Notes: a model not told the origin generated them from the sequence alone. DNA of 64,000 nucleotides from Mobula birostris (GCF_030028105.1 NC_092379.1:23553821-23617820), one strand, 5' to 3'; counted from the first letter of the stretch, positions 23,569 through 62,779 are shown. Numbers and translations are program-made.

Positions 23569-23634
<66 letters not shown>

Positions 23635-32209: not shown

Positions 32210-32297
32210 CTGAAAGAGATACAAAGTAACATCATGAGTCTAGTCCATGGACAGTCATCAAATGTCACACTGATCAGACAGGGTAAGGAGCGCACCA

Positions 32298-39151: not shown

Positions 39152-40166
39152 CTGCTTTTCAATTCGGAACAGTAAACTGCCTTTAGTAGACGATATTATC
39201 GAAGACATCTCAAGGCTTTATTTTTGGAAATTTGAAGGATATTCCACACACATGGTGGTGGTTGAATGGAGTACATAAGCTTGGGAAGTACGCGTTCTAA
39301 CTGATCTAACACACAAACACACACATGCTCCAAGCTATTTGTGTATCCGTCCTTGAACTCACGAGGCTCCAAGTCTTTCTCCTTGACAATTACAAATCAG
39401 GACTATTCATTTAGGACCTTTCCCACATTCCTTGCAACAGAGGGCCATATGTTCTTTCGCAGAATACTGTGGGAAAATAGGGGAAGATTACTGGGATCTC
39501 GATGGAGACTTTTGCATCTTCTTTAGTCATAGGTAAGGTCTGAGCAACCTGGAGGATAGCTCGAATCTTTCCTTTATTTCAGAAGTGCAGCATAGATAAT
39601 CCAGTAACATCAGAATAGTGAGCCTGATGTCAGTGGTAGGGAAATTATTGGAGATAATTATAAGGGGGACATTTGGAAAGACAGGGTGTACTGACGGATA
39701 GGCAGCGTGGCCTTGCGTTGGGAAAGTCTGCCTCACTAACACGATTGAGTTTTTTGAGGAGGCAACTGAGAAGGAAGGGCAGAAGGCATTGTCTGTGGAC
39801 TTCAGTAAAGGCCTTATGGAAGGCTCTACCACAGGGCCCTGCGTGGTAGTCTGATCCAGAAGGCTAAGTTAGATGAGAGTTAAGACTGTTCAGCTAATTG
39901 CATCGAAAATGAGCTTCAGGATAGGAGACAGAGGGTAAAGCTGGAAAGATATTTGTCTGATTGGAAGGCGGCATCCAAATATTTAAATTGAACCAAAATG
40001 GTATCTTTCGGGAACAGCAATGGACAGCAGTATATCATTTCAACTTTTCACCCTGGATTCTAATCGTATTGCCCCCTGACCCAATTCAGCCAGTTTCCCT
40101 TGATTTATAACGAAGGATTTTTCTTTCTGAGATGAATTGTACCAAACAAAATCAAGGTTGACTTAC

Positions 40167-40223
40167 GTGGAGTTACAGTCACAATCGTGCCAGATCCAAA
40201 TGTTATTTTGTTGCTGATACCCA
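40167..40223 (-). CDS. TRAJ: TRAJ segment (family A, C-proximal), GISNKITFGSGTIVTVTP
   Basis: Donor GTAAGT (plus acttac 40161-66); RSS plus-strand cacagta 40224-30, 12-bp spacer, acgaaaaca 40243-51. Confidence 0.92.
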
Positions 40224-40259
40224 CACAGTACTGGACAGCCTCACGAAAACACTACTTAC

Positions 40260-40316
40260 GTGGAGCGAGTGTCAAGCTGAACCCAGGTACAAATATTATT
40301 CGCCGGCTTTTACCCA
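40260..40316 (-). pseudogene. TRAJ: Defective TRAJ, GKSRRIIFVPGFSLTLAP
   Basis: Intact donor (40254-59) but FVPG replaces FGxG. Heptamer degenerate (no CAC); nonamer-like accaaaaca 40335-43. Confidence 0.75.
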
Positions 40317-40589
40317 AACTGGGGCGAAAACCTCACCAAAACAATGTCTATGAAGTGGTACAGAAATACAAACCTTTGGGACTGATGAATATAGAACGCA
40401 ATGGTCCCTGGACTTTAACAGGACTTTATAATTTTACATCTATCTTTTATCTCAGGGTTCCAGCATCTGTGGTTTTTGTGACAACACAAAAACATTTAGG
40501 GTACAGGATTAGACCCTCAAGCCTGTCTTGAACTTGAACTGATTTGTCCCAGGTTCGATCTCCTGACTGTGAAAGTTCTCCACAGCCTT

Positions 40590-42495: not shown

Positions 42496-42552
42496 TTGGA
42501 GTTACAGTCAGTCCAGTTCCAGGTCCAAATATTATTTTGAAATCACTCTTCA
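42496..42552 (-). CDS. TRAJ: TRAJ (family B), KSDFKIIFGPGTGLTVTP
   Basis: Donor 42490-95; cacggtg 42553-59, 12-bp spacer, tcaaaatct 42572-80. Confidence 0.9.
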
Positions 42553-44022
42553 CACGGTGTGACACATCCACTCAAAATCTCTACGATCAATTGTGGCGTG
42601 CGGCCCGTGGGATACTGTGCACATTTAAATGATGCTCACACTTCACGCTTTGGAAGGAAATTGTGCACCGAACGAAGAAATGAAAACATATGGACAAGAG
42701 TCGCTCGTCTGGCCCTCTGAGCCGGTTTTACCAGTCAATACAACATGGTTGATCCACCATCGCAATAACATGCACAACTCGCCCTGTACTTCTCCGTGCT
42801 TTATGCATAGACATAATTAGCTGCTGAGTACACAATTGGCTAAAACATCTTTTTAAAATCTATAAAGCCAATAATAGATATGCATAATTGCTATCTATTT
42901 ATCTATCTTTCCACCTTATCTTTTTTATCCATCCAGCTATCCAGCCGTCTATCTACATTTAACCACTTATCAGCCTGTCTGTTTTTTCATACACGTCTCT
43001 GACTCTATCTTTCAGTTCGGCTATTCATTTGAATCTCAGTTCATCGGTCTGCCTGTTTGTCCGTCTAACTAGATTACAGAGTACAGTGGACATTTTATTC
43101 CTAGTCTGTGACATCTGAAAATGGTTTTCAAAAGAAGGAGAAAGTGTTGAAAGAGGCATACAGAATATTTGTCTTCACCAGGCAGCTAACTGCAGGAACT
43201 TTATGGAAGAAAATTAGAAACAATTGGTTTGGTCACTCTTGGAATATTATGCAGCCACTCTATAGGAAGGATTTGATGGTGTTGGAGAGTGTCCAGAAAA
43301 AGATTCATTAAGCTGTTGCTCAGGTTGGAGAGTTTCAGCTATAATTGATAGTCTCAGTTTGTTTCCCTTGGATCTGGCGAAGGTGAGAGTGTCCTGGTTA
43401 AGGTGTACACAGTGGTCTCGGGCTAACTTCAGCAGCAAAAGTTGGCTATGGGAAAGGTACGTAACGATGGAGGACATAGGTTTAGAGAGGATTGGATGGT
43501 TATTCATAGAGGAATCTTTCATCTAGATGATGGCCGGGATCCGGAATGCCCAGCCAAAAGTCGTGGAAGCTCTACGCAAAATATTTCAGAAATACGTAGA
43601 CGACAACTTGAATCGCCAAATCATCAAAATCTATGGGTATCCGTCGAAAAATGGGTAGGTAGGAAGCTCATTATTGGCGTGGATATGTTGGGCTGTGGAC
43701 TGTAACAGTAATATTACCTTCAAATTCTGTGAGTTAATCAACAACATGTCCTACTTTTTACTTTTCTGATGAAGAGAAACTCTGCCATTTTACTTACTAA
43801 GTTGAACAACGAGTTTTGTCCCACTTCCAAACGTTAACTTGTTGCCCATTCCATATATCACACAATAACTGAATTTAATACAATAAATACCCGCTGACCA
43901 CCCCATTATAATACTCCAAAAATGAAACAGCCTGGTTACCGCAGCCAATCCCAAATTCAGGCACATTGGAGCTAATTATTCTCATAAACCTTCCATGTTA
44001 AGAGCAGGTGAGGGTGACTTAT

Positions 44023-44079
44023 TTGGAATCACAGTGACTCTAGTTCCTGGTCCAAAGGTTAATGGTTGGATGTTAGTCA
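44023..44079 (-). pseudogene. TRAJ: TRAJ (family D) with dead splice donor, TNIQPLTFGPGTRVTVIP
   Basis: Open frame and good RSS (cacactg 44080-86 / 12 / acaataacc 44099-107), but the donor reads ATAAGT (plus acttat 44017-22). The paralog at 50092 has GTAAGT. Confidence 0.85.
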
Positions 44080-44994
44080 CACACTGTTAGATAACATTAC
44101 AATAACCCGGATCGAGTAAATGACACTTTATGGGAAATATTGATAAGTGGCCTTAAATATAGTGTCTGCTGTGCTGCATTATAAACTACGAATATAACTA
44201 ATGTAAGTATTTGCTGATACATTATTTTATTTCTATTTGTTAAAGTACGTCTCAATCTATAAATGGACATATTAGCTCAGTCACAGAAAGATACATCTTA
44301 GAAACAGACCCTTCAGCCCAACGAGTCGTGCTGACCATTAAACGCCCACTTGCACTAATCATAAGATCGTACAGCACCGACACTGGCCCCTAAGCCCAGT
44401 TAGACCCTCTTGCACGTAATTATATAAATCCTACCCTAACTATTTATCTCTTCCCAAATTTTCATCAACTCTTTTCAGACTCCTGCATTCGCACACACAC
44501 TGGAGGCAATATGTCCATTATCCTTCCAAACTGCTTGACATTGAAACGGGGAAGGAAGTCAGAGAAAATCTACAAGGTCGCAGGAAATTCAGGCCAACTG
44601 CACACATTCAGCTCTGGAGCTGAGGATGGAATGCAGATCTCTGGAGCTGTCGTGGCGTTACCTACTGCCCCACTCTGCCGTCTCATCTATGTGGGACTTA
44701 TATCTCTTTTTGTCTTTCAATTAACACTCTTTGCCTTCCCGCCCCTCCATTTATACGTGGTTTAAGACATTTCAATAAAAAGAGTCCGGTATCCAATTTT
44801 ATTTTCAACTAATCATTAAAAAGGTAATCACCTGGAAAAGGAATTTATTTCACCTGAAGTAAATTGACCTGCAACCAGATTGAAAGCTAACCGATCTATT
44901 TAAGGGTTAGAGGTTGCACCAAATCGTATTTTCAAACATGTTGTGTCCCAGATTTACACTTCATCCTTTAGGGTAGCCAAACATGAGCACTTAC

Positions 44995-45056
44995 TGGGTC
45001 TATAATCACGTTGGTCCTACTCCCGGATATTAACTTGCTAATGCCTGTATCATTCA
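44995..45056 (-). pseudogene. TRAJ: TRAJ pseudogene (family E), NDTGISKLISGSRTNVIIDP
   Basis: Donor intact but phase 0 (1-nt loss); SGSR replaces FGxG; heptamer caaagta; poor nonamer. Confidence 0.75.
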
Positions 45057-45403
45057 CAAAGTATTTGACCCTCTTTGAAATGAACCCGTTTCATTATATT
45101 TTAAAAGGGTCATTTGCAATGCCTTCCTTGTCAATTGACCCTAATTAATAAAAGTACTAAGAAGGTTTTGTCAATGATGTCGTCTGTATCTGAATCTAGG
45201 GGATGTGGGAGAGGTCTTATATTAGAACTGTTGATCAGTAATCGACAGGGATTGAGACACGAAGGATAGCGGTTAATGTGGTAGGTTGGATATATAACAG
45301 TTCAGAGAAAGTGGCTTGGAACGCATATGGGTGGATAGCTTAACTCCCCAAAGTCGGTGAAACGTTTTCCAGAATACTATGGAAAACAAGGGAAATATTG
45401 CTG

Positions 45404-45611
45404 CTAACACGAGGAATTCTGCAGATACTGGAAATTCAAGGAACACACATCAAAAATGCCGGTGAACGCAGCAGGCCAGGCAGCATCTCTAGGAAGAGGT
45501 ACAGTTGACGTTTCAGGCTCTTTCTTCAGTTAGTCCTGACGAAGGGTCTCGGCCTAAACGTCGACTGTACCTCCTCCTAGAGATGCTGCCTGGTCTGCTG
45601 TGTTCACCAGC
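45404..45611. mobile_element. Penelope-derived short insertion with internal inversion, 11-bp TSD
   Basis: TSD aaatattgctg (45393-403, 45612-22); empty site in the paralog at ~51596; inverted arms 45461-517 and 45553-608. Confidence 0.88.
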
Positions 45612-46356
45612 AAATATTGCTGATATCCTGATGGAGAATTTTACATCTTCGTGGTCACAGTTGAGGTGTCAAAACACTGGAGGACACCTGGCGTTTTCTG
45701 TTATTTCAGCAGTATGGCTAAAAGAGGCTGGTGAACCCAAAATCAGTGGTCGGTGGATGAAGAAAATTCTAAGGAGCAGGAATTCTGTAGATTTGGCAAA
45801 ACAAAGATACATAAGGGCAGTTCGCATGCTATAGTGTGTGGTAAATTCTGCCTTACTAATTTGATTGAATTTTTTAAAGGAGAATACCGAGAAGACTTAC
45901 GAAGCTAGGGCAATAGATGTCTCTACAAACTTCAGTAAGGCGTTACCGATGGTCCTACCACTAAAGACCTGCGTGGTAGCATGATTCAGAATGATGCAGA
46001 TGAGAGTCACAGCTATTTTGCTAATTGGATGCAAAATGGACTTTATGATAGGAAGAAATGGGTAATGGTAAAACAATTTTCTTTTATGATTGAATTTTAG
46101 TATCTGAATATATTAATATTTAAATGCCATCAGCTCGCAGCAGCAATAGGACATATACTCCCTATCTACTTTCAAAGACAGAAGCAGTGTATGTGTGTGT
46201 GTATACATATATATATATGCACATATATATTTGCTTTTCACCTTGGAGTCTACTACTGTTCTCACGTGACACAATTCAACAAGACTTTCTTGATTTTTAA
46301 ACTTACAAAGTTCACTCAGGGATATATTGCACCCAATACAAGCAAAGTCGACTTGC

Positions 46357-46413
46357 GTGGAGTTACAGTTAGGCTGGTTCCTTATCCAAATGTTATTCCG
46401 TAGCTCTGACCCA
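46357..46413 (-). pseudogene. TRAJ: TRAJ pseudogene (family A), GQSYGITFG*GTSLTVTP
   Basis: In-frame TAA inside FGxG and donor GCAAGT. RSS cacagca 46414-20 / 12 / acaaaaaca 46433-41. Confidence 0.9.
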
Positions 46414-47194
46414 CACAGCAGTGGGCAGCCTCACAAAAACACGTCTGCTAGGTGCTATAGAAATGTAAACGTTTGTTTTGGTAATGATGACTGTAGATTG
46501 TGATGTCCCCAGGACTGAAACTTACCAGGAGTTTCTTTTTTAAAAAAATCTCGGGGTAGCAGAATTTGTTTTATTCTGATTAGAAATAAACACTTAAGGA
46601 CAGTAGGCCACCCTGTCACTCAGACCTGCCCTACTATTCAACATGAACTGATATGTCCCAGGTCCCATCTCCTCTTTTGCACGAGATCGTCATAAGCTTG
46701 AATTTTCCAATCACACAGAAATTCATCTACTTACTCCTTCAATATCACCGATGGTCCACCTCTCACAATCAGTTGCGGTGTGGACTTCCAGAGATTCACT
46801 CGTCCCTGAAAGAATAAATCTCTAAATGCACAGTTTCAAATAATAGATCCTTTCCCTTGCTTGTCCCTCATTTACTGGTCTTCAAATGGTGGAAACATCT
46901 TCTCATCTAACTGTCAAACCTTTTCGAAATCCACACTTTTCAATAAGATCACCTATCGTTCTTCCAATAGATCGTAACTCTAACTTTTCAACATTTTGTA
47001 CAAGGTGCGTGGTCGCACTAACAACTATTATAACAGCTGTCGGCTTCAGATCCGTACAGTAGCTAAGCCAATATCAAGATACTATCAATCCCGCCAGCAA
47101 GGCCACAGAAAGACCAGAAAGTAAATATTTCTAGGCGGCAATAATGCCAAGCAGGAATAATGGACCAAGTGATTGGTGAACAAGGGTGACTTAC

Positions 47195-47251
47195 TTGGAG
47201 TTACAGTGAGCCTGGTTCCCGATCCAAATATTACTTTGACGTTATTATTCG
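47195..47251 (-). CDS. TRAJ: TRAJ (family B), NNNVKVIFGSGTRLTVTP
   Basis: Donor 47189-94; consensus heptamer cacagtg 47252-58 / 12 / ccaaaaact 47271-79. Confidence 0.93.
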
Positions 47252-48691
47252 CACAGTGTGAGACGTCCACCCAAAAACTTGGCCCCATTGCCAGATGTGG
47301 CCTTTGGCTCATGAGATTCTGTGCACATAGATATGATATTCATACTTCTCATTGTGGAGGGGAATTGTATTCTAGGGAAAGACCCAGGGGCAGGAATCAA
47401 CAATTTGGTTCTCCTTGCTGGCTCTGTCACTTAGTACAATCATGACGATCCACCATCTCAATGCCATGCACTACTTCAGGGTGCTTCTTGCATAGGGATA
47501 ATTATCGGGAAATTAGTGACAGAGCACTGCCTTTGAGATATAATGGTAACATTCCATACATGCAATTCCTGACAATCTATCTGTAAAGAGTAAGCACTTA
47601 TCTGTCTATATGTTGTCAGTCCGTGTACTTACCTACCTACCCATCTATCGATCTATCTGTATTTTCCCATGCATCAGAATGAATCAGAATCTCTTTGTCT
47701 GTGTACCTTTCGTTTCGTCCATTTGTCTGAATCTCGATTAATCTGTCTGTCCAACTAGATTACAAGTTATGGTGGGCATTTGCTCTCCTAGGCTACGAGA
47801 CCTGAAAATCGATTTGAAAAAAGATGGAAGTGTTGAGTGAGTCACACAGAGTACTTGTCTTCACTAACCAGGCAATAGAACACAAAAGCAGGAAGGTTAT
47901 GTAACAAGTTTTCAAAAGATTGGTTTGGTCACTCTTGGAATATTATGCAATGTTATGGACGCCTCACTATAGAAAGGAATTGATTGTGTTGGGGATGTGC
48001 ATAAAAGATGCGTAAGGTTGTCGCCCAGGTTGGAGCAATTCAATTATGATTGATAGCGTCCGTTTGTTGCTCTTGGAGCTGTCCAGCAAACGTTCATGAA
48101 AAAGGTACTTAAAGTTAGAGGACATAGGTTTAGGGAACGATTAGAGCTCTTAGGGTTATCCAAAGAGGGTTTTTTTTTCACCCAGAGGATGGATGGGTCG
48201 GTATGCACGTTATTTAAGAATTATGTAGAGGATAGCGTGAATGGTCAAATGATCAAAGTGTATAGGCGATTAATTCGTATTTGGGTAGGTAGAAAGCTGA
48301 TGATTGGCGTGAATATGATGGGCTGAAAGGCCGTATTCCTTACATTCTAACTTTTATATTACCTTAAAATTCTGTGAGTTAGTTGCATATTTTGCCTGTT
48401 TTGGCAAAAAGGCAGAATGTCCTGCATTTCCTTCGCTGAGGAAGAGAAACTCGGTCATTTTGCTTTCTGTGTTCCACAAGGAGTCTTGGTCCACTTCTAA
48501 ACATTAATTTACTGCCCATTCCACAATTTACACAGGAAAAGAAACTCTTACAATAATATCCGCTGACTAACCCATTGTAGTGTTTCAAAAAGAAATCAGT
48601 ACTTTTATTCCAGCGAATCCCAAATTCAGGCATATGAATGCCGATTACACTCATAAACCGTTTATGTTAAGAGCAGCTGAGGGTGACTTAC

Positions 48692-48748
48692 TTGGAATCA
48701 CAGTCAGTCTAGTTCCCGATCCAAAGATTATTGGTAAGTTGCTTTTCA
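48692..48748 (-). CDS. TRAJ: TRAJ (family C), KSNLPIIFGSGTRLTVIP
   Basis: Donor 48686-91; cacactg 48749-55 / 12 / acaataacc 48768-76. Confidence 0.92.
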
Positions 48749-50097
48749 CACACTGTTGGATAACATTACAATAACCCGGAGCCACTAAGGGGCTCTTTAT
48801 GGGAAATATTAGTGAGTCCACTTAAACATAATACTTGCTCTGCTTCATTATAAAACAGAATTGCAACTTATGTAAGCAACTGCTGATACATTATTTTACT
48901 TCTGTTTGCTAATGAATGTATGAATTTACTAATGGACGTATTAGGCCAGACACGAAAATTTACGAAACAGAAACAGATCCATCCTATCACTTATTCATTC
49001 AGCTATCTATTTGTCTATCTACATTTTACCATTCATCAGACTATTTGTTTTCCCAATTGTTTTCTGTGACTCTGCATTTTTCAGTTCGTCTATTCATGTG
49101 AACCTCGATTCATCGGTCTGTCTATTTGTCTGTCTAACTAGATTATAGGCTATAGTGGACATTTTTTTTCCTAGTCTGTGACATCTGAAAATGGTTTTCA
49201 AAAGAAGGAGTAAGTGTTGAAGGAGGCATACAGAATATTTGCCTTCACCAGCCAGATAAGTGCAGGAAATTTATGGAAGAAAATTAGAAACAATTGGTTT
49301 GGTCACTCTTGGAATATTATGCAGGCACTCTATAGGAAGGATTTGATGGTGTTAGAGAGTGTAAAGAAAAGATTCATCAGGCTGTTGCCCAGGTTGGAAA
49401 GTTTCAGCTATAATTGATAGTCTCAGTTTGTTTCACTTGGATCTGGCGAAGGTGAGAGTGTCCTGGTTAAGTTGCACACAGTGGTCTGGTGCTAACTTCA
49501 GCAACAAAAGTTGGCTACGCTAAAGGTACGTAAGGATGGAGGACACAGGTTTAGAGAGGAGTGGAGCTTTTATAGTTATTGATAGAGGGATCTTTCATCT
49601 AGAGGATGGTTAGGATACCGGACGCCCTGTCAAAAGTGGTGGAAGCTGTATGCAAAATATTTCAGAATTATGTAGACGACAACTTGAATCGCCAAATCAT
49701 CAAAGTCTATGGGGATCCATCGAAAAATGGGTAGGTAGAAAGCTCGTTACTGGCGTGGATTTGTTGGGCTGTGCACTGTAACAGTAATATTACCTTCAAA
49801 TTCTGTGAGTTAATCAATAACATGTCCTACGTTTCCTTTTCTAATGAAGAGAAAATCTGCCATTTTACTTACTAGGTTGAACAACGAGTTTTGTCCCACT
49901 TCCAAACGTTAACTTGTTGCCTATTCCATATATCACACAGAAACTGAGCTTAATGCAATAAATACCCGCTGACCACCCCATTATAATACCCCAAAAATGA
50001 AACAGCCTAGTTACCGCAGTGAATCCTAAATTCAGGCATATTGGAGCTAATTATGCTCATAAACCTTCCATGTTAAGAGCAGGTGAGGGTGACTTAC

Positions 50098-50154
50098 TTG
50101 GAATCACAGTCACTCTTGTTCCTGGTCCAAAGGTTAATGGTTGCATGTTATTCA
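50098..50154 (-). CDS. TRAJ: TRAJ (family D), NNMQPLTFGPGTRVTVIP
   Basis: Donor 50092-97; cacactg 50155-61 / 12 / acaataacc 50174-82. Confidence 0.92.
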
Positions 50155-51071: not shown

Positions 51072-51258
51072 TGGTTTCCATAATTACATTGGTCCTACTC
51101 CCGGATATTCTGACGTAGGGTCTCGGGCTGAAACGTCGACTGTACCTCTTCCTAGAGATGCTGCCTGGTCTGCTGCGTTCACCAGCAACTTGAATTTCCA
51201 GCATCTGCAGAATTCCTCGTGTTCCCGGATATTAACTTGCTATTGCCTGTATGATTCA
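51072..51258 (-). pseudogene. TRAJ: TRAJ pseudogene (family E) interrupted by a 113-bp insertion
   Basis: Removing 51110-51222 and one TSD copy gives NHTGNSKLISGSRTNVIMET; donor GTAGGT; heptamer caaacta. Confidence 0.8.
51110..51222 (+). mobile_element. Penelope-derived short insertion inside a J pseudogene, 11-bp TSD
   Basis: TSD tcccggatatt (51099-109, 51223-33); empty site in the paralog at ~45020; same subfamily as 45404-45611. Confidence 0.9.
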
Positions 51259-52159: not shown

Positions 52160-52196
<37 letters not shown>

Positions 52197-52322
52197 TTGC
52201 TTTTCACCTTGGAGTCTACTCCTGTTCTCACATGACACAATTCAACCAGGTTTTCTTGATTTTTAAACTTACGAAGTTCACTCAGGGATATATTGCACAC
52301 AGCACAAGCAAAGTCGACTTAC

Positions 52323-52379
52323 GTGGAGTTACAGTCAGGCTGGTTCCTAATCCAAATGTTATTCGGTAGCTCTGACCCA
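52323..52379 (-). CDS. TRAJ: TRAJ (family A), GQSYRITFGLGTSLTVTP
   Basis: Donor 52317-22; cacagta 52380-86 / 12 / tcaaaaact 52399-407. Confidence 0.92.
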
Positions 52380-53164
52380 CACAGTAGTGGGCAGCCTCTC
52401 AAAAACTCGTGTGCTAGGCGCTATAGAAATGTAAACCTTTGTTTTGGTAATGATGGCTGTAGATTGCGGTGGTCCCAGGACTGAAACTTAGCAGGAGTTT
52501 CTTTTTTAAAAAAAATCTCGGGGTAGCAGAATTTGTTTTTGTTTTCTGATTAGAAAGAAACTCTTATGGACAGGAGGCCACTCTGTCACTCAGACCTGCC
52601 CCTCTATTCAACATGAACTGATTTGTCCCAGGTCCCATCTCCTCTTTTGCACGAGATCGTCATAAGCTTGAATTTTCCAATCACACAGAAATTCATCTAC
52701 TTACTCCTTCAATATCACCGATGGTCCACCTCTCACAATCAGTTGCGGTGTGGACTTCCAGAGATTCACTCGTCCCTGAAAGAATAAATCTCTAAATGCA
52801 CAGTTTCAAATAACAGATCCTTTCCCTTGCTTGTCCCTCATTTACTGGTCTTCAAATGGTGGAAACATCTTCTCATCTAACTGTCAAACCTTTTCGAAAT
52901 CCACACTTTTCAATAAGATCACCTATCGTTCTTCCAATAGATCGTAACTCTAACTTTTCAACATTTTGTACAAGGTGCGTGGTCGCACTAACAACTATTA
53001 TAACAGCTGTCGGCTTCAGATCCGTACAGTAGCTAAGCCAATATCAAGATACTATCAATCCCGCCAGCAAGGCCACAGAAAGACCAGAAAGTAAATATTT
53101 CTAGGCGGCAATAATGCCAAGCAGGAATAATGGACCAAGTGATTGGTGAACAAGGGTGACTTAC

Positions 53165-53221
53165 TTGGAGTTACAGTGAGCCTGGTTCCCGATCCAAATA
53201 TTACTTTGACGTTATTATTCG
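53165..53221 (-). CDS. TRAJ: TRAJ (family B), NNNVKVIFGSGTRLTVTP (identical to 47195-47251)
   Basis: Donor 53159-64; cacagtg 53222-28 / 12 / ccaaaaact 53241-49. Confidence 0.93.
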
Positions 53222-54685
53222 CACAGTGTGAGACGTCCACCCAAAAACTTGGCCCCATTGCCAGATGTGGCGTTTGGCTCATGAGATTCTGTGCACATAG
53301 ATATGATATTCATACTTCTCATTGTGGAGGGGAATTGTATTCTAGGGAAAGACCCAGGGGCAGGAATCAACAATTTGGTTCTCCTTGCTGGCTCTGTCAC
53401 TCAGTACAATCATGACGATCCACCATCTCAATGCCATACACCACTTCAGGGTGCTTTTTGCATAGGGATAATTATCGGGAAATAAGTGACAGAGCACTGC
53501 ATTTGAGATATAATGGTAACATTCCATACATGCAATTCCTGACAATCTATCTGTCAAGAGTAAGCACTTTTCTGTCTATATGTTGTCAGTCCGTGTACTA
53601 ACCTACCTACCCATCTATCGATCTATCTGTATTTTCCCATGCATCAGAATGAATCAGAATCTCTTTGTCTGTGTACCTGTCGCTTCGTCCATTCGTCTGA
53701 ATCTCGATTAATCTGTCTGTCCAACTAGATTATAGGTTACGGTGAATATTTGCTATCCTAGTCTGTGAGACCTGAAAATGGTTTTGAAAGAAGAAGGAAG
53801 TGTTGAACGAGTCACACAGAATACTTGTCTTCATTAGCTAGGCAATAGAATACAGAAGCAGAAAGGTTATGGAACAAGTTTTCAAAAGATTGGTTTGGTC
53901 ACTCTTGGAATATTCTTGGAATGTTGTGCACGCCTCACTATAGGAAGGATTTGGTTGTGTTGGAGAGTGTGCATAAAAGATTCGTGAGGTTGTCGCCCAG
54001 GTTGGGGCGTTTCAATTATGATTGATAACGTCAGTTTGTTGCTTTTGGAGCTGGCCAACTAAAGTTCATGAAAAAGGTACTTAAAGTTAGAGGACATAGG
54101 TTTAGGGAACGATTAGAGCTCTTAGGGTTATCCAAAGAGGGTTTTTTTTCACCCAGAGGATGGATGGGTCAGTACGCATGTTATTTAAGAATTATGTAGA
54201 GGATAGCGTGAATGGTCAAATGATCAAAGTGTATAGGCGATTAATTCGTAATTGAGTAGGTAGAAAGCTGATGATTGGCTTGAATATGATGTGCTGAAAG
54301 GCCGCATGTCTTGCATTCTAACTTTTATATTACCTTAAAATTCTGTGAGTTAGTTGCATATTTTGCCTGGTTTGACATATGCGGCTTCCATTCTCGGCAT
54401 AATAAATAGCATGTCCTGCATTTCCTTCACTGAGGAAGAGAAACTCAGTCATTTTGCTTTCTGTGTTCCAAAAAGAGTCTTGTTCCACTTCTAAACATTA
54501 ATTTACTGCCCATTCCATAGTCTACGCAGGAAAAGAAACTCTTGCACAAATATCCGCTGACTAACTCATTGTAGTGTTTCAAAAAGAAATCAGTCCGTTT
54601 ATTCCAGCGAATGCCAAATTCAGGCATATGAATGCGGATTACCATCATAAACCGTCTATGTTAAGAGCAGCTGAGGGTGACTTAC

Positions 54686-54742
54686 TTGGAATCACAGGCA
54701 GTCTAGTTCCCGATCCAAAGGTTAATGGTAAGTTGCCATTCA
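54686..54742 (-). CDS. TRAJ: TRAJ (family C), NGNLPLTFGSGTRLPVIP
   Basis: Donor 54680-85; cacactg 54743-49 / 12 / acaataacc 54762-70. Unusual T>P in the G strand. Confidence 0.88.
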
Positions 54743-55949
54743 CACACTGTTGGAGAACATTACAATAACCCAGAGCCACTGAGGGACTCATTATGGGAAA
54801 TATTAGTGAGTCCACTTAAATACAATGTTTGCTCTGCTTCATTATAAACCACAAATGCAACTTATGTAAGCGACTGCTGATACATTATTTTACTTCTATT
54901 TGCTAATGCATGCAATAAGTTATTAATGGACGTATTAGCCCAGTCACGAAAATTTACAACGCAGAAACAGATCCATCCTAGCACTTATCCATTCAGCTAT
55001 CTATTTGTCTATATACATTTTGCCATTCATCAGCCTGTTTGTTTTCCCGTAACCGTCTCTGACTCTGCATATTTCAGTTATTCTATTCATGTGAATCTCG
55101 ATTCATCGGTCTGCCTGTTTGTCTGTCTTACTAGATTGTAGGCTATAGTTGATACTTTTTCCCAGTCTGTGACATCTGAAAATGGTTTTCAAAAGAAGGA
55201 GAAAGTGTTGAAGCAAGCATACAGAGTACTTGTCTTTACCAGCCAGATAACAGCAGGAAGGTTATGGAACATATTTACAAACGATTGGTTTGGTCACTCT
55301 TGGAATATTCTACAGCCAGTCTATAGGAAGGATTTGATTGTTTTGGAGTGTGCCAAAAAAGATTAATCAGGCTGCTGCCCAGGATGAAGAGTTTTAGCTA
55401 TAACTGATAGCCCCAGTTTGTGTCAAAATTTGGCTATGGCAAAGATACTTAAAGATAGAGAACATAGGTTTAGAGAGGATTAGATCTTTTATGGTTATTC
55501 ATAGAGAGAGCTTTCATCTAGTGGATGGTTGGGATCTGGAATGCACTGCTCAAAGTGGTGGAAGCAGTACGCACAGTGTTTCAGAATTATGTAGACGACA
55601 ACTTGAATTGCCAATTCATCAAGTTCTCTGGGGATCCGTTGAAAAATGGGTAGGTAGAAAGCTCATTATTGGTGTGGATATGTTGAGCTGAAACAGCTCA
55701 TTCTCTGCACTGTAACTTTTATATTAACTTCAAATTTAATATAAAAAATAAAAAAAAACATTAATTTGTTGCTCATTCCATACTTCATACAGCAACTGAA
55801 ACTTATATAACAAATATCATCTGACCAACCCATTATAGTACCTGAAAAAGAAAACAACCTGGTTATCGCAGCAAATCCTAAATTCAGGCACATTGGAGCT
55901 AATTATGCTTATAAACCTTCCATGTTAGCAGCAGGTGCGGGTGACTTAC

Positions 55950-56006
55950 TTGGAATTACAGTCAATCTGGATCCTGGTCCAAAGGTTAGTGGTAAGTTGT
56001 TATTCA
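55950..56006 (-). CDS. TRAJ: TRAJ (family D), NNNLPLTFGPGSRLTVIP
   Basis: Donor 55944-49; cacaccg 56007-13 / 12 / acaataact 56026-34. Confidence 0.88.
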
Positions 56007-56884
56007 CACACCGTTAGATAACATTACAATAACTCGGATCCAGTAAAGGACACTTTATGGAAACTATAATGTCTGCCCTGTTGCATTATAAAACAGAAAC
56101 ATAACTAATGTAAGCATTTGCAGATACATCATTTTACTTCTATTTGCTAAAGTATGTATCAATCTATGAATGGACATATTAGCTCAGTCACAGAAAAATT
56201 CATCTTAGAAACAGACCCTTCCGCCCAGCAAGTCTTGCTGACCATCAAACACTCGTTTGCACTAATTCTATTGTCTTACAGCACCGACACTGGCCCTTAG
56301 GCCGAATCAGTCGTCACCGACCTTCTTGTACCCAATTACAGCATTGTACCCTAGCTATTTTCTCTTCCCAAATTTTCATGAAATCCTTTCAGATTCCAGC
56401 ACTCTCCCACACACTGGGGGAAATTTACAGTAACCAATTACCCATCCAAGGCAGTCGGAGAAAATCTACAGGGTCGCAGGAAAATCAGGCCAACTGCACA
56501 CATTCAGCTGTGTAGCCGAGGATGGAAATTGGATCTCTGGAGCTGTCGTGGCGTTGCCAGTTTCCTCACTCTGCCATCTCATCTATTTGTGACATATATT
56601 TCTTTCTGACTTTCTATTAACTCTGTTTTTCTCCCCACCGGTCCATCTAAACAGAAAAACTTTTCAATAAAAATGTGCGTTAACCAGTTATATTTTCAAC
56701 TAATCTTTGAGAAGGTAACCATTTAGTGAAGGAACATATTTATCTGAAAGTAATTGACCTACAACGATACTGAAAGCTAACTAATTTGTTTAAGGGTTAG
56801 AAGTTGCACCAAATCATATTTTCAAACATGTTATGTCCCAACTTTACACTTCTTTCTTCAATTTAGACAAATATGAACTCTTAC

Positions 56885-56946
56885 TGGGTTCCATAGTATA
56901 TTGGTCCTACTCCTGAATAATAACTTGTTATTGCCTATGTGATTCA
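56885..56946 (-). pseudogene. TRAJ: TRAJ pseudogene (family E), NHIGNNKLLFRSRTNILWNP
   Basis: FRSR replaces FGxG; 1-nt deletion (phase 0); heptamer caaagta 56947-53; donor GTAAGA. Confidence 0.72.
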
Positions 56947-57294
56947 CAAAGTACTTGACTCTCTTTGAAAAGTATCCGCTTCAGTTTTAAAACCTTCCTT
57001 GTTAATTGACGCTAAATGATAAAAAATATTAAGTTAAGTTTTATCCCTGAGACCAACGATAGTATTTCCACAGAAACCAGCCCAGTTGTCTTTCTACAGA
57101 CACATCAAAAACCTGAAGTAGTTTACAGCCAATGTAGCTTCTGAAGGTTTAGCCACCTCTTGTGCAGAAAGGTTCAGTCCGAACCTTGCAGTCCAAACTG
57201 TCCCAAAAGATGCCGTCTATTTTTGAATCTAGTGTATGAGGGCGACGTCTTAAATTAGTACTGCTTGTCAGTAATCGCCAAGGATATGGACATG

Positions 57295-57436
57295 NNNNNN
57301 NNNNNNNNNNNNNNNNNNNNNNNNNNNNNNNNNNNNNNNNNNNNNNNNNNNNNNNNNNNNNNNNNNNNNNNNNNNNNNNNNNNNNNNNNNNNNNNNNNNN
57401 NNNNNNNNNNNNNNNNNNNNNNNNNNNNNNNNNNNN
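57295..57436. other. Assembly gap (142 N)
   Basis: N run. Confidence 1.
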
Positions 57437-58290
57437 CAGAATACTATACAAAACAAAGGAAATATTACTGAGATTCTGATGGAGATCTTGCATCTTCTGT
57501 AGTCATAGGTGAGGTGTCAAAACTTTGGAAGTCACCTAGCTTTTTCTATTATTTCAGCAATATGGCTACAGCAGAGAATTACAGGGGTGAGCCTAAAGTC
57601 AGTGGTCAGTGGTTGAAAAAAATTCTAAGGAGCAGGAATTCTGTACATTTGGGAAAACAATGATACATAAAGTAGTCAGCATGGTATAGTGTGGTAAATT
57701 TTGTCTCACTAATATGATTGATTTTTTTGAGGAGGCAGCTAAGACTTATGAAGGCAGGATAGTAGACGTTGCCTATATGAACTTCAGCAAGGCTTCCCTG
57801 ATGGTTCTACCACAAAATTCTACGTGATCAAGAATGGTTAAGGTAGATGAGAGTCATGGCGATTTAGCTAATTGGATCCAAAATGGACCACGATAGGCAA
57901 TAGGTAATGGTAGAAAATATCTGATTGAAATTCTGTACAGTATCCGAATATATAAATTGATCGAAAATGTCAGCTGCTAGGGACAACAATTTTGCCATTT
58001 TATATTCAAAAAGAGGAGCAGTATATATTTTCGCGTTTCAGCCTGCCTGGGTTTGCTGTTTCTCTCTGATCTGACTTCCGTGGTTTTTCTTTGTTTTGAG
58101 GCTACCTGGAGAAGAATAACTTCAGAGTGCTGCATCAATACTTTGATAATCAATGAACCTTTGAGCTTTTAGAACCTTTGGATTATATGCCTTTTGTCAC
58201 CTGACACAATTCAGCCAGATTTTCCTGATTTCACACTTACAAAGTTCTCTTAGTGATAATTTGCACACAATACAAGCAAAGTCGACTTAC

Positions 58291-58347
58291 GCGGAGATAC
58301 AGTCAGGCTGGTTCCTAATCCAAATGTTATTTCATAGTTGCCACCCA
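58291..58347 (-). CDS. TRAJ: TRAJ (family A), GGNYEITFGLGTSLTVSP
   Basis: Donor 58285-90; cacagta 58348-54 / 12 / acaaaaagc 58367-75. Confidence 0.92.
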
Positions 58348-59134
58348 CACAGTAGCGGATAGCCTCACAAAAAGCACGTGTGATTGGAACTATAGATATG
58401 TAAACCTTTGGGACTGGTGGCTACGGAATTTGATGGCCCCAGGACTGAAATTTACCAGGATTCGCTATTTATTTTTAATCTTGGGTTTGCAGCAGCTGCT
58501 TTTTTTTTTCGGATGACAAAGAAACACTTAAGAACCAGGAATAGGCCACTCGGTCCCTCGGACCTGCTCCACTATTCAACATGAACTGATTGTCCCCAGA
58601 CTCCATCTACTCTGCTGTACGAGATTTGCTCTGTATTTTCCGATCTTCCAGAATTATATCTAATTAGTCCTTCAATATCGTTGATGGTCCAACCCTTACA
58701 ACCGGCTGTGGTATGGAATTCCAGCGATTCACTCTCCATGAAAGCGTAAATCTCCAATTCCACAGCTTCAAATTAAAGATCCCTTCCCTTGTTTGTCCCT
58801 TATTCAAAAATGTTAACTGGTGGACACATCTCCTCATCAAACTGTCAAGCCTTCTCGGAATCTTACACGTTTCAATAAGATCACCCATCATTCTTCTGAC
58901 ATGTCTTTAATCTAACTTTTCAACACTTTGTACAAGGAGGATGGTCGCACTACTGAATATTATAGCACTGTCTTCGTCAGATGCAAGCAGTGTCTGACCT
59001 AATACCAAGATACGTATATGGTATCAATCCCACCAGTAAGTCCACAGAAAGCATCTCACTGTTAATATATCTAGACGATAATGATGCCAAGCGGGAACAA
59101 TGGACCAAGTGTTTGAAGAACAAGGGTGACTTAC

Positions 59135-59191
59135 TCGGAGTTACAGTGAGTTTGGTTCCGGATCCAAAGATTACTTTGAGGTTGTCATTCA
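59135..59191 (-). CDS. TRAJ: TRAJ (family B), NDNLKVIFGSGTKLTVTP
   Basis: Donor 59129-34; cacagtc 59192-98 / 12 / ccaaaagcg 59211-19. Confidence 0.9.
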
Positions 59192-60701
59192 CACAGTCTG
59201 ACACCTCCACCCAAAAGCGGTCATTCGTGGCGTTTGGCTCATGGGATACTGTACACATAAATATGATGCTCACACTTCTCATTTTGGAGGGAAATTGTAT
59301 TCCAGAAAACAGGCACAGGGGCAGGAATCAACTGTTTTTCCCTCCGAGTTGGTTCTGTCATTCAATGCAATCATGGTTGATCCACCATCTCAGTGCCATA
59401 TACTATATCTGGGCGCTTTTTGCAACGATATAATTACTGCCAATAGTGATAGAGCATTGCATTTGAGATATAATAATAACATTGCATCCATATTATTCCT
59501 GTCGATCTTTCAGGAGTCAGCATCTATCAGTCTATATGCTGGCTGTTCTTGTATCTACCTGCCCATCTATCAATCTACCGATACTACACCATGCATCAGA
59601 CTGAATATTCCCCTCATACACCTCTCAGTCTCTCAAGTATCTTTTACAGTAGTTCGCCCATTCGTCTGACCCTCAATTCACCAGCCTGTCTATCTATATA
59701 CTAAATTATAGGTTACAGTCGAAAATTACTTTCCTAGTCTGTGAGTTCTGAAAGTGATTTTTAAAAGAAGCAGAAAATGGTGAAAGAGGCAAAAGGATCA
59801 TTTGCCTCAGCTGTAATGTTATTAAGCGTTCTGTACGTCTCACTACAGGAAGAATTACTCGCACTGGAGAGCGTACAGAGAAAGTTCACCTGGTTGCTGT
59901 CTGGGATAGAACGTTTCGGTATGTTGTGAGACTGTATAGTCTGGGTTTGACTACTTTGAAGCGAGGGATATTGAGTGGAGGAAGGACCTGATAACTGTGC
60001 GCACAATTATGAGGCATTAAGATACAGTAGCAAACATTCTCCTGTAGCAAAATTAAACAACAATAGAGGACAAAGGCTTAGGGAAATATAAAAATCCTTG
60101 TGGGAATAATTGGAGGATCGTGTTTTTTTTCCACCATGAGGATGGCTGGTATCTAGAACACATTGCTTGATGGAGTGAAATAAGCAGTACTCACAACATT
60201 TAAGAAATACGTAGACGAGGACTGGAATCCCTGAGACATGAAAGGACATGAACGAAGTGCTTTTATTTCTGAATAATATAGGTAGAAATTCGAAGATTGT
60301 GGTAGTTGTGATGGACTGAATAGATTGATTCTGTACAATCTAAGGGTAATTTTGCTCTCAAATCCTGCGAGTTAATTGCAAATTTTACACTTTTTCTTCG
60401 AAGATAGAGCTTCCATTCTCTGCTTAACTAATTAAATGTCTTGTGTTTTCCTTTACTGAGAAAGGAAGACACTGCTAGTTTGCTTACTGGATTCCACGAA
60501 GATTTTTGTTTCTCTTCCAAACTTTAATTTGTTGCCCATTGGGTAATATATACAATGCCTGATCTTCTTACAGAAAATACCCGCTGGCTAACCCCTTACA
60601 GTATTTAAAAAAAAAGAAGGCAAACTAGCTATCAAAATGAATCTTAAATGTCGGTAATAACGATAAGCAGTCTGTGCTAACAATGAGTGTTGGCGACTTA
60701 C

Positions 60702-60758
60702 TTGGAATCACATTCAGTATGGTTCCTGATCCAAATGTTAATGGTAGGCCACTATTCA
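60702..60758 (-). CDS. TRAJ: TRAJ (family C/D), NSGLPLTFGSGTILNVIP
   Basis: Donor 60696-701; cacactg 60759-65 / 12 / acaataacc 60778-86. Confidence 0.91.
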
Positions 60759-61580
60759 CACACTGTTAGATGGTCTTACAATAACCCTGAGCTATTAAGG
60801 GAAATATTAATGAGTGCACCCAACTATAACGTTTGCTTTTCTTCTTCGTAAACTACAAATTCAATTTGTATAAGTAATTGCTGATATCTTACTTTAATTT
60901 TCTTTGCTAACGTAGGCATCAGTTGAGGAGTGGACATATTAGCTCATAGTCACAAAATGATATAACTCAGAAACGCGCCATTCAGCTGAATGAGTCCGTT
61001 CTGACCATCAAACACTAATTTGTACTAATCATAGGATCATACAACACAGATTGAGGCCGTTTGGCTCAATGAATCTGACTGACCCTCTTGCACATCAGCT
61101 CCTTTCAGATTCCAGCAGCAATTTGCAGTAACGAATTAGACTACTAACTTCTCTTCCTTTAGAACGAGGGAGGAATTACAACAATCCTGTAGATCACAGG
61201 AAGAACCTGCAAACTCTGTGCAGTCATCCCAGGAACTAAAGATGGAATGTGGATCTCTGGAGCTGTAGTGGCTTTACCACCTTCTCCACTGTGCCATCTG
61301 TGTGTGACGTTTATCTCTTCAATTTTCTATTCTCCCAAAAAAGATCTCCCCATCCATGCACTGATACATGAAGTTCAAGTCCTTTCAATTAAAGAGTGTG
61401 TATTTCAATTTTATTTTCATCTGGTTATCAAGAAGGAAATAATTTGGAAAAGAGAATATATTTTGCCTCAGCCAAATTGACCTGTAACTAGATTTACGGG
61501 TTGGAAGTTGCTTCAAGCTACATTTTCATGCCGTATGTGTTACAATTTATGTTTCATGATCTACAAATGTAAACACTTAT

Positions 61581-61643
61581 TGGGTTCCATAGTCACACTT
61601 GTCCCAATCTCAAAAATTAAAGTGTTATTACCCATATAATTCA
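61581..61643 (-). pseudogene. TRAJ: TRAJ pseudogene (family E), NYMGNNTLIFEIGTSVTMEP
   Basis: FEIG motif; donor mutated to ATAAGT; heptamer cataatg. Confidence 0.75.
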
Positions 61644-62779
61644 CATAATGATTGACCCTCTTTCAAATATATCCGCTTCACTCTCTTTCATCCAATTCAT
61701 CCTACTTTGTGAAGGGCCTTCCTCGTTAACTGACCCCAATTGATGTCAATATTTTGTAAGTTTTATCCCTGAGAACAACCACCGTAATTCCATAGAAACC
61801 AACTAAATGTCCAAAGGATTGTATTTCTATAGCATGCCTCGCATCCCTAACTCAGTTCACTGTCAATACAGCACTTTGAAAGATTAGCCACTGCCAGCTT
61901 GTGGAAAAAAGGATAACAAATATATTTTCCAGATGCAACAAGCCAGCTCCGCATGTAAACGTTGGTGCTAACTCCCAAAATGACCCTCGAATTATGCAGA
62001 GTCAAGACAGTTCTTCACTGGACATTTGCAGGCGATGGGACGTGGGGTTGTGAGAGACTGTGAGGGACTTTGAGATGGCCGAGATAGGGCAATGCAGTAA
62101 ACTGCAGGGGCTGTATTAAAGATTTTGCTGACTAGGCAAATAAATACCAACAACCTCAGCAGCAATTAAAGAGGAGAAGTCTGCTATAATGGAAATAATA
62201 TGCTCATAATTAGTTTTGAAATATAGCGGCCATTTTAACAAGTATTACTTTTCAGTGAATGAATGAGCTTACATTGGAATCATTTACCGCTTGCATTCTC
62301 CATCCATTTTAACTTCCTCTTTTTATCTTCTCTTATATTATTTTCCTGCACATTTTTCTCTATCTCTGCAGGTCCACCGATCAACATAACCGTCATAACA
62401 ATCGTTTCATATTGAACATGATTTGCAACACCCTCTGGGTTTGATTTAAGAGATAGAGCAGACAAATGACATTTTCCTACTTTTTATGAAAAAAAAACAC
62501 ACAAATATGTTTTAAGCAAAATTGCTGCAAAATAACGATTGTTTCACACTTACTAGGTTCCACAATCAGTCTCGTTCCACTTCCAAATACCAGCTTGTCT
62601 CCCGCTCCATAATTCACACAGTACCTGATTCTCATACAATAACACCACTAGCCAATCCATGTTGTTTTTCTGAAAATCTCAGCACACAACGACCTCCTAA
62701 CAGAAATATCTCTGGTCAATCTCTGGTCAATTAGAAATAATAAAGGATTTTTAAAAATTTGGAACCAAGAGTAACTTAA

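What the first reader, a model, noticed from the sequence alone, without database searches (positions are those of the whole stretch)
39300..61750. TRAJ array built from ~6-kb multi-J block duplications
The order E-A-B-C-D recurs in full twice (44.9-56.8 kb). The flanking units have only one C/D-type J, and C and D are themselves duplicates with shared flanks. The 20 segments therefore reduce to about 5-6 lineages, so germline J diversity is much lower than the count suggests. Mammalian TRAJs are mostly old and highly divergent, so this visible recent birth-and-death pattern is notable.
Basis: seen in the sequence. Interest (0 to 1): 0.7.

Follow-up and report, generated by a model that had tools for sequence, protein, structure and literature searches.

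The report
Manta ray TRAJ array block duplications
This is the end of a manta ray T-cell-receptor alpha joining-segment array nearest the constant gene; it grew by repeated tandem copying of multi-segment blocks, which is real and cleanly traceable but an ordinary way for such gene arrays to evolve.

Summary
Confirmed. The window is the Mobula birostris TRA locus. TRAC lies on the minus strand at 33.4-31.3 kb. Upstream, at 40.2-62.9 kb, are 27 J-like elements in the same orientation, 25 of them inside the finding. Fifteen are intact, with a 12-bp-spacer RSS, FGXG and a GT donor; twelve are defective. They fall into five lineages (A, B, C/D, E, F).

A ~6.0-kb block of seven J-like elements is present twice in tandem (42925-48990 and 48991-54984), 7.8% diverged in the spacers. 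Older copies flank it: K2P 0.17-0.25 for 55.0-61.1 kb, ~0.30 between the E'C and ED modules, and >0.6 for the outer units.

The young junction is a hybrid module that switches parentage at ~49.1-49.2 kb, as unequal crossing-over between older modules predicts. A 778-bp near-identical tract (46654-47431) makes two J segments identical, which indicates gene conversion. The same hairpin repeat entered each copy at a different site.

A Mobula hypostoma gene model carries the ortholog of the copy-1 J (C2), sharing four C2-derived residues. The duplication therefore predates that species split and is not an assembly artefact.

The N gap (57295-57436) lies in a spacer with collinear flanks. Duplicated TRAJ genes are already reported in catfish and salmon, so novelty is modest.

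The parts
33146..33424 (-). TRAC exon 1 (Ig C1-set domain)
   Evidence: tblastn 100% over 93 aa to P0001, an NCBI M. birostris TCR alpha chain. Pfam C1-set. Homolog search.
32163..32210 (-). TRAC exon 2 (connecting peptide)
   Evidence: tblastn 100%.
31340..31438 (-). TRAC exon 3 (transmembrane region)
   Evidence: tblastn 100%.
40167..40251 (-). J A1, intact; the intact J closest to TRAC
   Evidence: 12-bp-spacer RSS, FGSG, GT donor.
40260..40343 (-). J A'1, defective (FVPG, degenerate RSS with 13-bp spacer)
   Evidence: nhmmer E=1.9e-6. Sequence.
42496..42580 (-). J B1, intact. Its ortholog is used in M. hypostoma model P0025 (22/24 aa).
43798..43888 (-). J E1, intact but ends in L instead of P (young copy 1)
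44023..44107 (-). J D1, intact ORF and RSS, but the splice donor GT is replaced by AT (young copy 1)
44994..45082 (-). J F1, defective (SGSR in place of FGXG, poor nonamer)
46357..46441 (-). J A2, defective (stop codon inside the FGXG motif; GC in place of the GT donor)
47195..47279 (-). J B2, intact and identical to B3
   Evidence: NCBI model P0006 uses B2 or B3.
48468..48558 (-). J E'2, defective (FRSG, no GT donor)
48692..48776 (-). J C2, intact. Its ortholog is used in M. hypostoma model P0019 (49/52 aa).
49873..49963 (-). J E2, intact (young copy 2)
50098..50182 (-). J D2, intact; spliced to TRAC in NCBI model P0011
51072..51098 (-). J F2, 3' remnant only. The RSS and 5' half were displaced by the repeat insertion at 51099-51222.
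52323..52407 (-). J A3, intact
53165..53249 (-). J B3, intact and identical to B2
54462..54552 (-). J E'3, defective (FRSG, no GT donor)
54686..54770 (-). J C3, intact; spliced to TRAC in NCBI model P0008
55756..55840 (-). J E3, 5' remnant. The coding part is cut off before FGXG by a T-rich stretch.
55950..56034 (-). J D3, intact (FGPGS)
56884..56972 (-). J F3, defective (FRSR)
58291..58375 (-). J A4, intact
59135..59219 (-). J B4, intact
60488..60578 (-). J E'4, defective (FGRE; heptamer ends in GTA)
60702..60786 (-). J C4, intact
61581..61671 (-). J F4, defective (FEIG, no GT donor)
62554..62644 (-). J G (E lineage), intact, outside the finding. Spliced to TRAC in P0014; amino acids identical in M. 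hypostoma P0002.
62780..62862 (-). J H (C/D-like), defective (FGSE, no GT donor), outside the finding
42925..48990 (.). Young duplicate, copy 1. On the + strand it holds E1 D1 F1 A2 B2 E'2 C2.
48991..54984 (.). Young duplicate, copy 2 (E2 D2 F2 A3 B3 E'3 C3). High identity to copy 1 continues for another 460 bp, to 55444.
54985..61100 (.). Older copy of the same block (E3 D3 F3 A4 B4 E'4 C4); K2P 0.17-0.25 to the young pair. It contains the N gap at 57295-57436.
49100..49200 (.). Crossover zone inside the hybrid ED module. To the left the module resembles the 54985 module; to the right it resembles the 42925 module.
   Evidence: Three-way informative sites.
46654..47431 (.). Gene-conversion tract matching 52624-53401: 2 mismatches in 778 bp against ~61 expected. 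It covers J B2/B3.
   Evidence: Read-contig depth there is about twice that of copy-specific contigs.
45405..45624 (.). Hairpin (MITE-like) repeat insertion found only in copy 1
   Evidence: DNA fold of -71.6 kcal/mol, z = -12.
51099..51222 (.). Insertion of the same repeat family found only in copy 2, at a different site. Contig depth there is ~10^6 in all four runs.
57295..57436 (.). Assembly gap in the F3-A4 spacer. The flanks are collinear with the paralogs.

Best explanation
The region is the TRAC-proximal quarter of the Mobula birostris TCR-alpha J (TRAJ) array, transcribed on the minus strand.

It arose from a small set of ancestral J segments (five lineages; deeper in the tree, two super-lineages). 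These were copied as multi-J blocks by unequal crossing-over between paralogous modules already present in the array.

The latest event was a crossover between two older E-D modules. It duplicated a ~6.0-kb block holding seven J-like elements. This happened before M. birostris and M. hypostoma separated.

Since then:
- the two copies diverged by ~8% at roughly the neutral rate, in the J segments as well as the spacers;
- each received a separate insertion of the same hairpin repeat;
- several J segments decayed through a lost donor, a lost FGXG motif, a stop codon or truncation;
- a ~0.8-kb gene conversion re-homogenised one J pair (B2 and B3).

Functionally, the intact J segments are substrates for V-to-J recombination and splice to TRAC. 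Because they lie near TRAC, they would be the last targets reached during successive V-J rearrangements. That last step is inferred from the mammalian model and is not shown here.
For: LOCUS IDENTITY. TRAC exons match at 100%. J anatomy is complete: nonamer, 12-bp spacer, heptamer ending in GTG, FGXG, and a donor after the first base of a codon. NCBI models join J B2/B3, C3, D2 and G to TRAC.

BLOCK STRUCTURE. Self-BLAST, global alignment, K2P layers and the J tree with five clades.

MECHANISM. In the middle ED module, informative sites favour the 54985 module to the left of ~49.15 kb (20 against 11). They favour the 42925 module to the right (12:3, 12:4, 5:0 and so on). The breakpoints lie at the edges of the older 1.3-1.4-kb modules.

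INDEPENDENT HISTORY OF THE COPIES. The same hairpin repeat family sits at different sites, 45405-45624 and 51099-51222.

GENE CONVERSION. 2 mismatches in 778 bp against a 7.8% background.

AGE AND REALITY.
- M. hypostoma P0019 matches C2 at 49/52 residues and C3 at 39/52.
- It agrees with C2 at 11 of the 12 positions where C2 and C3 differ. Four of those are C2-derived states, judged against D1/D2/D3/C4 as outgroups.
- A 501-bp read contig with no mismatch spans the copy junction (48697-49197).
- A second species (organism B) has a contig across the junction, 48874-49224, with 12 differences in 351 bp. The paralogous junction in this genome differs there by ~40.
Against: - No orthologous DNA could be fetched from another species. 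The cross-species argument rests on one translated gene model and on short k-mer contigs.
- Logan contigs merge close paralogs. All 40 listed 'other letters' were the paralog's letter, so the reads cannot count copies.
- Depth fits equally well two diploid copies or two half-depth haplotypes: ~10-13 for copy-specific contigs and ~21 for the identical tract.
- The X5 run may come from the same animal as the assembly.
- V-J rearrangement and actual use of these J segments in T cells were not observed.
Confidence: 0.9

Rival explanations
1. False duplication. On this view the two 6-kb copies are two divergent haplotypes of one block, which the assembler placed in tandem.
For: Copy-specific contigs have about half the depth of the identical tract, which haplotypes would also produce. 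A join inside a homologous module is also where an assembler could switch sequences.
Against: - 7.8% substitution divergence, separate repeat insertions and other indels over 6 kb are far beyond ordinary allelic difference.
- There is no gap at the junction, and a zero-mismatch 501-bp read contig crosses it.
- The C2 version exists in another species, with four shared derived residues. The C3 version is expressed in M. birostris.
- Organism B holds 96-98%-alike contigs for both halves of the laid stretch and for the junction.
Confidence: 0.04
2. Concerted evolution. On this view the two copies are as old as the 75-79% layer and only look young, because repeated gene conversion keeps them alike.
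For: Gene conversion does act here: the 778-bp near-identical tract.
Against: - Outside that tract, identity is fairly even (86-96% per 200 bp) across 6 kb, with sharp outer limits at 42925/48991 and 49451/55444.
- The junction module is a simple two-parent hybrid.
- Patchy conversion would instead give a mosaic of old and young tracts.
Confidence: 0.05
3. The J-like elements belong to a locus other than TRA, such as TRD or a non-rearranging family.
For: None beyond the general similarity of J segments between loci.
Against: They lie directly upstream of TRAC in the same orientation, and gene models splice them to TRAC. A density of 27 elements in 23 kb fits TRAJ arrays only.
Confidence: 0.01

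Closest known systems
Teleost TRAJ arrays (channel catfish 125 TRAJ, PMC8656973; Atlantic salmon 128 TRAJ, PMC8559430)
   Same: Both are long J arrays upstream of TRAC that contain lineage-specific duplicates. In catfish, 71 of 125 TRAJ fall into 21 subgroups at 75% identity or more. In salmon, 'many TRAJ genes ... are duplicated'. Some J segments lack FGXG or are pseudogenes.
   Different: - Here the duplication unit is resolved as a 6-kb, seven-element block, with a mapped crossover, a conversion tract and a nested age series.
- The defective share is much higher: 12 of 27, against 4 of 125 in catfish.
- J spacing is ~0.9 kb, against ~0.44 kb in catfish.
- The host is a cartilaginous fish.
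Mammalian TRAJ arrays (61 TRAJ in human, pig and sheep; PMC4574546)
   Same: Same position and orientation relative to TRAC, the same RSS-12, FGXG and donor anatomy, and a comparable array length (~80-100 kb).
   Different: The mammalian count is stable across orders, and by my own knowledge the genes are largely one-to-one orthologs. The manta array shows young paralog blocks, two identical J segments and many decayed copies.
Block (cassette) duplications in other antigen-receptor loci, e.g. the catfish TRDV-TRAV arrays (PMC8656973)
   Same: Tandem repetition of multi-gene units, supported by phylogeny.
   Different: Those cases involve V genes. Here the repeated units consist only of J segments and their spacers.
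TG microhomology and fixed RSS position classes of fish J-alpha elements (Giorgetti et al. 2023, PMC10322711)
   Same: 13 of the 15 intact J segments start with TG directly after the heptamer. The heptamer-to-Phe distance falls in two classes, 23 and 29 nt, six bases apart.
   Different: This was only noted here. Junction usage was not tested.

Membership tests
TRAJ gene segment | Recombination signal 5' of the segment: nonamer, 12-bp spacer, heptamer ending in GTG next to the coding end | tested here: met
   All 15 intact J segments have a 12-bp spacer, a heptamer matching 5-7 of 7 and ending in GTG, and a nonamer matching 5-8 of 9.
TRAJ gene segment | F-G-X-G motif in an open frame of about 19-21 codons | tested here: met
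   Met in the 15 intact elements and in D1, whose only defect is the donor. Lost, interrupted or truncated in the other 11.
TRAJ gene segment | GT splice donor after the first base of the last codon, in phase with TRAC exon 1 | tested here: met
   GTAAGT-type donors sit 34 nt after the Phe codon. NCBI proteins read ...VIP-N-RRNPLK across the splice.
TRAJ gene segment | Lies upstream of TRAC in the same orientation | tested here: met
   J segments at 40.2-62.9 kb and TRAC exon 1 at 33424-33146, all on the minus strand.
TRAJ gene segment | Joined to V-alpha segments by RAG in T cells and used in expressed TCR-alpha chains | not testable with these tools
   Only J-to-C spliced gene models and contigs from a probable RNA run over the array are available. 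No V-J junctions were seen.
Tandem segmental duplication by unequal crossing-over (non-allelic homologous recombination) | Head-to-tail copies with nothing between them | tested here: met
   42925-48990 is directly followed by 48991-54984.
Tandem segmental duplication by unequal crossing-over (non-allelic homologous recombination) | Pre-existing homology at the breakpoints and a hybrid junction element | tested here: met
   The breakpoints lie in the older ED modules, and the middle module switches parent at ~49.1-49.2 kb.
Gene conversion between paralogs | A sharply bounded tract of near identity within otherwise diverged copies | tested here: met
   2 mismatches in 778 bp against 7.8% elsewhere. 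Read-contig depth is about doubled there.
Assembly false duplication (haplotigs in tandem) | The copies differ only at allelic level, and the junction is unsupported by reads | tested here: not met
   7.8% divergence plus separate repeat insertions; a zero-mismatch contig across the junction; a copy-1 ortholog in another species.
Assembly false duplication (haplotigs in tandem) | Each copy has half the genome-wide read depth | tested here: inconclusive
   Copy-specific contigs have depth ~10-17 and the identical tract ~21. No single-copy baseline outside the duplicate could be laid, because read laying is capped at one call.

The most novel reading that the evidence does not exclude
The TRAC-proximal end of the mobulid TRAJ array is a zone of ongoing turnover under relaxed constraint. 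Block gain by unequal crossing-over, gene conversion and rapid decay (44% defective) would all act there. J copy number and content would then differ between manta and devil ray species and perhaps between individuals. That would contrast with the frozen one-to-one J-alpha orthology of mammals. It would also offer a natural test of how much the last-used J segments matter for receptor editing.
Probability: 0.3. Interest if true: 0.45.

Novelty: new member of a known kind. Interest (0 to 1): 0.3.

Why it matters
- It gives a base-level account of how a TCR-alpha J array grows and decays in a cartilaginous fish: the duplication unit, the crossover point, a conversion tract, and the pseudogene load.
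- I found no published description of TRAJ germline organisation for this group in the searchable library.
- For annotation and repertoire work on rays it has practical consequences. Counting J-like elements overstates the usable repertoire: 15 of 27 are intact. B2 and B3 cannot be told apart in transcripts. Short-read assemblies will merge parts of the two copies.
- Conceptually it extends to elasmobranchs what is already known from teleosts. It does not open a new question.

Tried and rejected
- FETCHING THE ORTHOLOGOUS LOCUS. Look-ups with P0001-P0004 found no gene on record. P0019 (M. hypostoma) and P0008 (M. birostris) were found but returned no DNA, because the file was too large or the gene range was 106.8 kb.
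- SHARE OF 31-MERS AS A TEST FOR BOTH COPIES IN ORGANISM B. Rejected as indecisive. The two copies of this genome already share 26% of their words because of the conversion tract, against 0.30 and 0.42-0.45 for organism B.
The runs are short Logan contigs that merge close paralogs. All 40 listed differences were the paralog's letters. Copy number, allele status and organism B's copy content could therefore not be read off. Depth could not separate two loci from two haplotypes.
- THE 'GOES BACK 5981' AND 'SKIPS 148' JOINTS. These are paralog contigs laid on the other copy, not real rearrangements.
- SELECTION ON THE J SEGMENTS. Divergence between the young copies is 11.3% in the RSS, 7.7% in the CDR3 part and 6.8% in the FR4 part, against 7.8% in spacers. 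There is no clear purifying or diversifying signal, and the counts are small.
- MORE J SEGMENTS BETWEEN TRAC AND A1. Only two decayed relics were found.
- ABSOLUTE DATING. No divergence time for the two Mobula species was extracted.
Full report
**The gap, tested first**

The window has two N runs, 24530-24999 and 57295-57436. Only the second lies inside the finding.
- The 89 bases before it match paralog positions 51375-51463 and 45173-45252.
- The bases after it match from 51572 and from 45370.

Order and orientation are therefore kept across the gap. The unread part corresponds to 108-117 bp of F-to-A spacer in the paralogs, against 142 N written. Neither paralog has a J in that interval. 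The gap is non-coding, so no reading frame is at stake. Nothing was filled in or looked up.

**What the locus is**

A stop-to-stop frame on the minus strand at 33463-33098 hits Pfam C1-set. It is 99% identical to 'T cell receptor alpha chain MC.7.G5-like' of Mobula birostris. The three coding TRAC exons map at 100% to 33424-33146, 32210-32163 and 31438-31340.

All J segments lie upstream on the same strand, so the region is the TRAJ array of the giant manta ray.

The J used by model P0001 is not in the window, and the NCBI gene range is 106.8 kb. The window therefore holds only about the TRAC-proximal quarter of the array.

**The J inventory**

A motif scan, a profile search and inspection give 27 J-like elements between 40.2 and 62.9 kb. 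Twenty-five of them lie inside 39300-61750.

Fifteen are intact: A1, B1, E1, B2, C2, E2, D2, A3, B3, C3, D3, A4, B4, C4 and G. Each has:
- a nonamer, a 12-bp spacer and a heptamer ending in GTG;
- an open frame with FGXG;
- a GTAAGT-type donor 34 nt after the Phe codon.

Twelve are defective:

| Element(s) | Defect |
|---|---|
| D1 | donor GT changed to AT |
| A2 | stop codon inside FGXG; GC in place of the GT donor |
| E'2, E'3 | FRSG; no GT donor |
| E'4 | FGRE; heptamer ends in GTA |
| F1, F3, F4 | FGXG lost |
| F2 | 5' half displaced by a repeat insertion |
| E3 | 3' half cut off |
| A'1, H | degenerate |

NCBI models splice B2/B3, C3, D2 and G to TRAC. A probable RNA run of the species holds about half the 31-mers of the array, while two sister runs hold ~1%.

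**Repeat structure**

A tree of the elements resolves five clades, A, B, C/D, E/E'/G and F. They form two deeper groups.

On the + strand the order is: A1 A'1 B1 | E1 D1 F1 A2 B2 E'2 C2 | E2 D2 F2 A3 B3 E'3 C3 | E3 D3 F3 A4 B4 E'4 C4 | F4 G H.

- Self-BLAST aligns 42925-49451 with 48991-55444 at 91-92%.
- A global alignment gives 86-96% per 200 bp.
- Spacer divergence is 348/4449 = 7.8%.

| Comparison | K2P |
|---|---|
| Young pair (copy 1 against copy 2) | 0.07-0.09 |
| Young pair against the 55.0-61.1 kb copy | 0.17-0.25 |
| E'C modules against ED modules | ~0.30 |
| E'4C4 or F4 against their relatives | 0.40-0.46 |
| Unit I, and the G/H pair | >0.6 |

The corrections concern strand, element count, the omitted E-type element, and the true limits of the young duplicate.

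**Mechanism**

The young duplicate starts and ends at the edges of the older 1.3-1.4-kb E-D type modules.

I compared the three ED modules site by site. The middle one (48991-50390) agrees with the 54985 module to the left of ~49.15 kb, by 20 informative sites to 11. To the right it agrees with the 42925 module (12:3, 12:4, 5:0, 8:1 and so on).

That is the hybrid expected from unequal crossing-over between two paralogous modules on misaligned chromatids.

After the event:
- A hairpin-forming, extremely abundant repeat entered copy 1 at 45405-45624, and the same family entered copy 2 at 51099-51222. The copy-2 insertion destroyed the 5' half of F2.
- A tract at 46654-47431 became nearly identical to its partner: 2 mismatches in 778 bp against ~61 expected. 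This makes J B2 and B3 identical. Read-contig depth there (~21) is about twice that of copy-specific contigs (~10-13).
- J parts diverged at about the spacer rate: RSS 19/168, CDR3 part 12/156, FR4 part 15/222.

**Is it real, and how old is it?**

Reads helped less than hoped.
- The runs are short Logan contigs that merge close paralogs. All 40 listed 'other letters' equal the paralog's base.
- Depth cannot separate two loci from two haplotypes.

Some read evidence is still useful.
- A 501-bp contig with no mismatch crosses the junction (48697-49197).
- Organism B, a related species, has a contig across it (48874-49224) with 12 differences in 351 bp. The paralogous junction in this genome differs there by ~40.
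- Organism B's other contigs are 96-98% alike over 46.6-50.8 kb.

The stronger evidence comes from a gene model.
- Mobula hypostoma isoform P0019 reads through the RSS and upstream flank of its J. Over 52 residues it matches C2 (copy 1) at 49 and C3 (copy 2) at 39.
- Of the 12 positions where C2 and C3 differ, it has the C2 state at 11.
- At four of these (positions 6, 8, 35 and 40) the C2 state is derived, judged against D1/D2/D3/C4.

The C2 lineage therefore already existed when the two species split. The duplication is older than that split and cannot be an artefact of this assembly. C3 and D2, both in copy 2, are themselves expressed in M. birostris models.

**Comparison with what is known**

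- Mammals keep 61 TRAJ across human, pig and sheep (PMC4574546).
- Teleost arrays are larger and hold recent duplicates. In catfish, 71 of 125 TRAJ fall into 21 subgroups at 75% identity or more, and 4 are pseudogenes (PMC8656973). In Atlantic salmon, 'many TRAJ genes ... are duplicated' (PMC8559430).
- Shark papers state only that sharks have many J-alpha segments (PMC5931798).
- I found no germline description of a cartilaginous-fish TRAJ array.
- The TG start of 13 of the 15 intact J segments, and the two RSS position classes (23 and 29 nt), fit the pattern reported for cartilaginous and ray-finned fishes (PMC10322711).

**Verdict**

The process is ordinary birth-and-death evolution of a tandem array. 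It is new for this animal group and unusually well resolved: crossover point, conversion tract, nested ages and a 44% defective share. It is not a new kind of system. Interest 0.3.

Noticed in passing
window 15054-20900 (core 15356-19451): A G-rich minisatellite on the + strand: 31-bp unit, ~133 copies, 74% matches. GC skew stays at +0.38 to +0.41 from 14 to 24 kb (+0.26 to +0.28 on to 28 kb). It lies ~10 kb beyond the 3' end of TRAC. Function unknown.
   Followed up: partly
window 35677-35777 and 37385-37436, minus strand: Two decayed J relics between the last intact J (A1) and TRAC. The first keeps a nonamer-12-heptamer-like signal and a frame reading ...YKLIV*FGT*LTTTS, with two stops and no donor. 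The second keeps only an RSS-like signal and a J 5' end.
   Followed up: partly
window 45405-45624 and 51099-51222; weaker copies near 13.35-13.48, 14.5-14.6, 20.9-21.0 and 26.2 kb: A hairpin-forming, MITE-like repeat family. The DNA fold is -71.6 kcal/mol (z = -12). Contig depth is ~10^6 in runs of three Mobula-group organisms, so it is one of the most abundant repeats of these genomes.
   Followed up: partly
window 45000-55000: One probable RNA run of the species (X5) holds 0.49-0.50 of the 31-mers of the J array, while two sister runs hold 0.01. Organism B shows the same contrast (X10 at 0.17-0.21 against X32 at 0.01). This suggests tissue-specific transcription through the unrearranged J array. 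RNA status is only a guess in the record.
   Followed up: partly
window 46844 and 47302: These are the only two mismatches inside the conversion tract. At both, the contigs of all four runs show the copy-2 base, not the base written in the window. They may be assembly errors in copy 1, or variants dropped by the contig builder.
   Followed up: partly
window 33146-33424 (TRAC exon 1) against 62554-62644 (J G): TRAC exon 1 is only ~73% identical in amino acids between M. birostris and M. hypostoma over the query. J G is identical in amino acids, including the translated RSS. The constant-domain surface appears to evolve fast in these rays.
   Followed up: no
window 23569-24529, next to the gap at 24530-24999: A long GA/TC-rich low-complexity stretch borders the first assembly gap. 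I did not examine it.
   Followed up: no
window 1-14500: Many short ORFs here look like fragments of retroelement reverse transcriptase. Inverted copies match 39.5-41.9 kb (for example 13508-14425 against 41886-41006 at 72%). This explains why unit I (A1 to B1) is 2.3 kb long instead of 0.85 kb.
   Followed up: no
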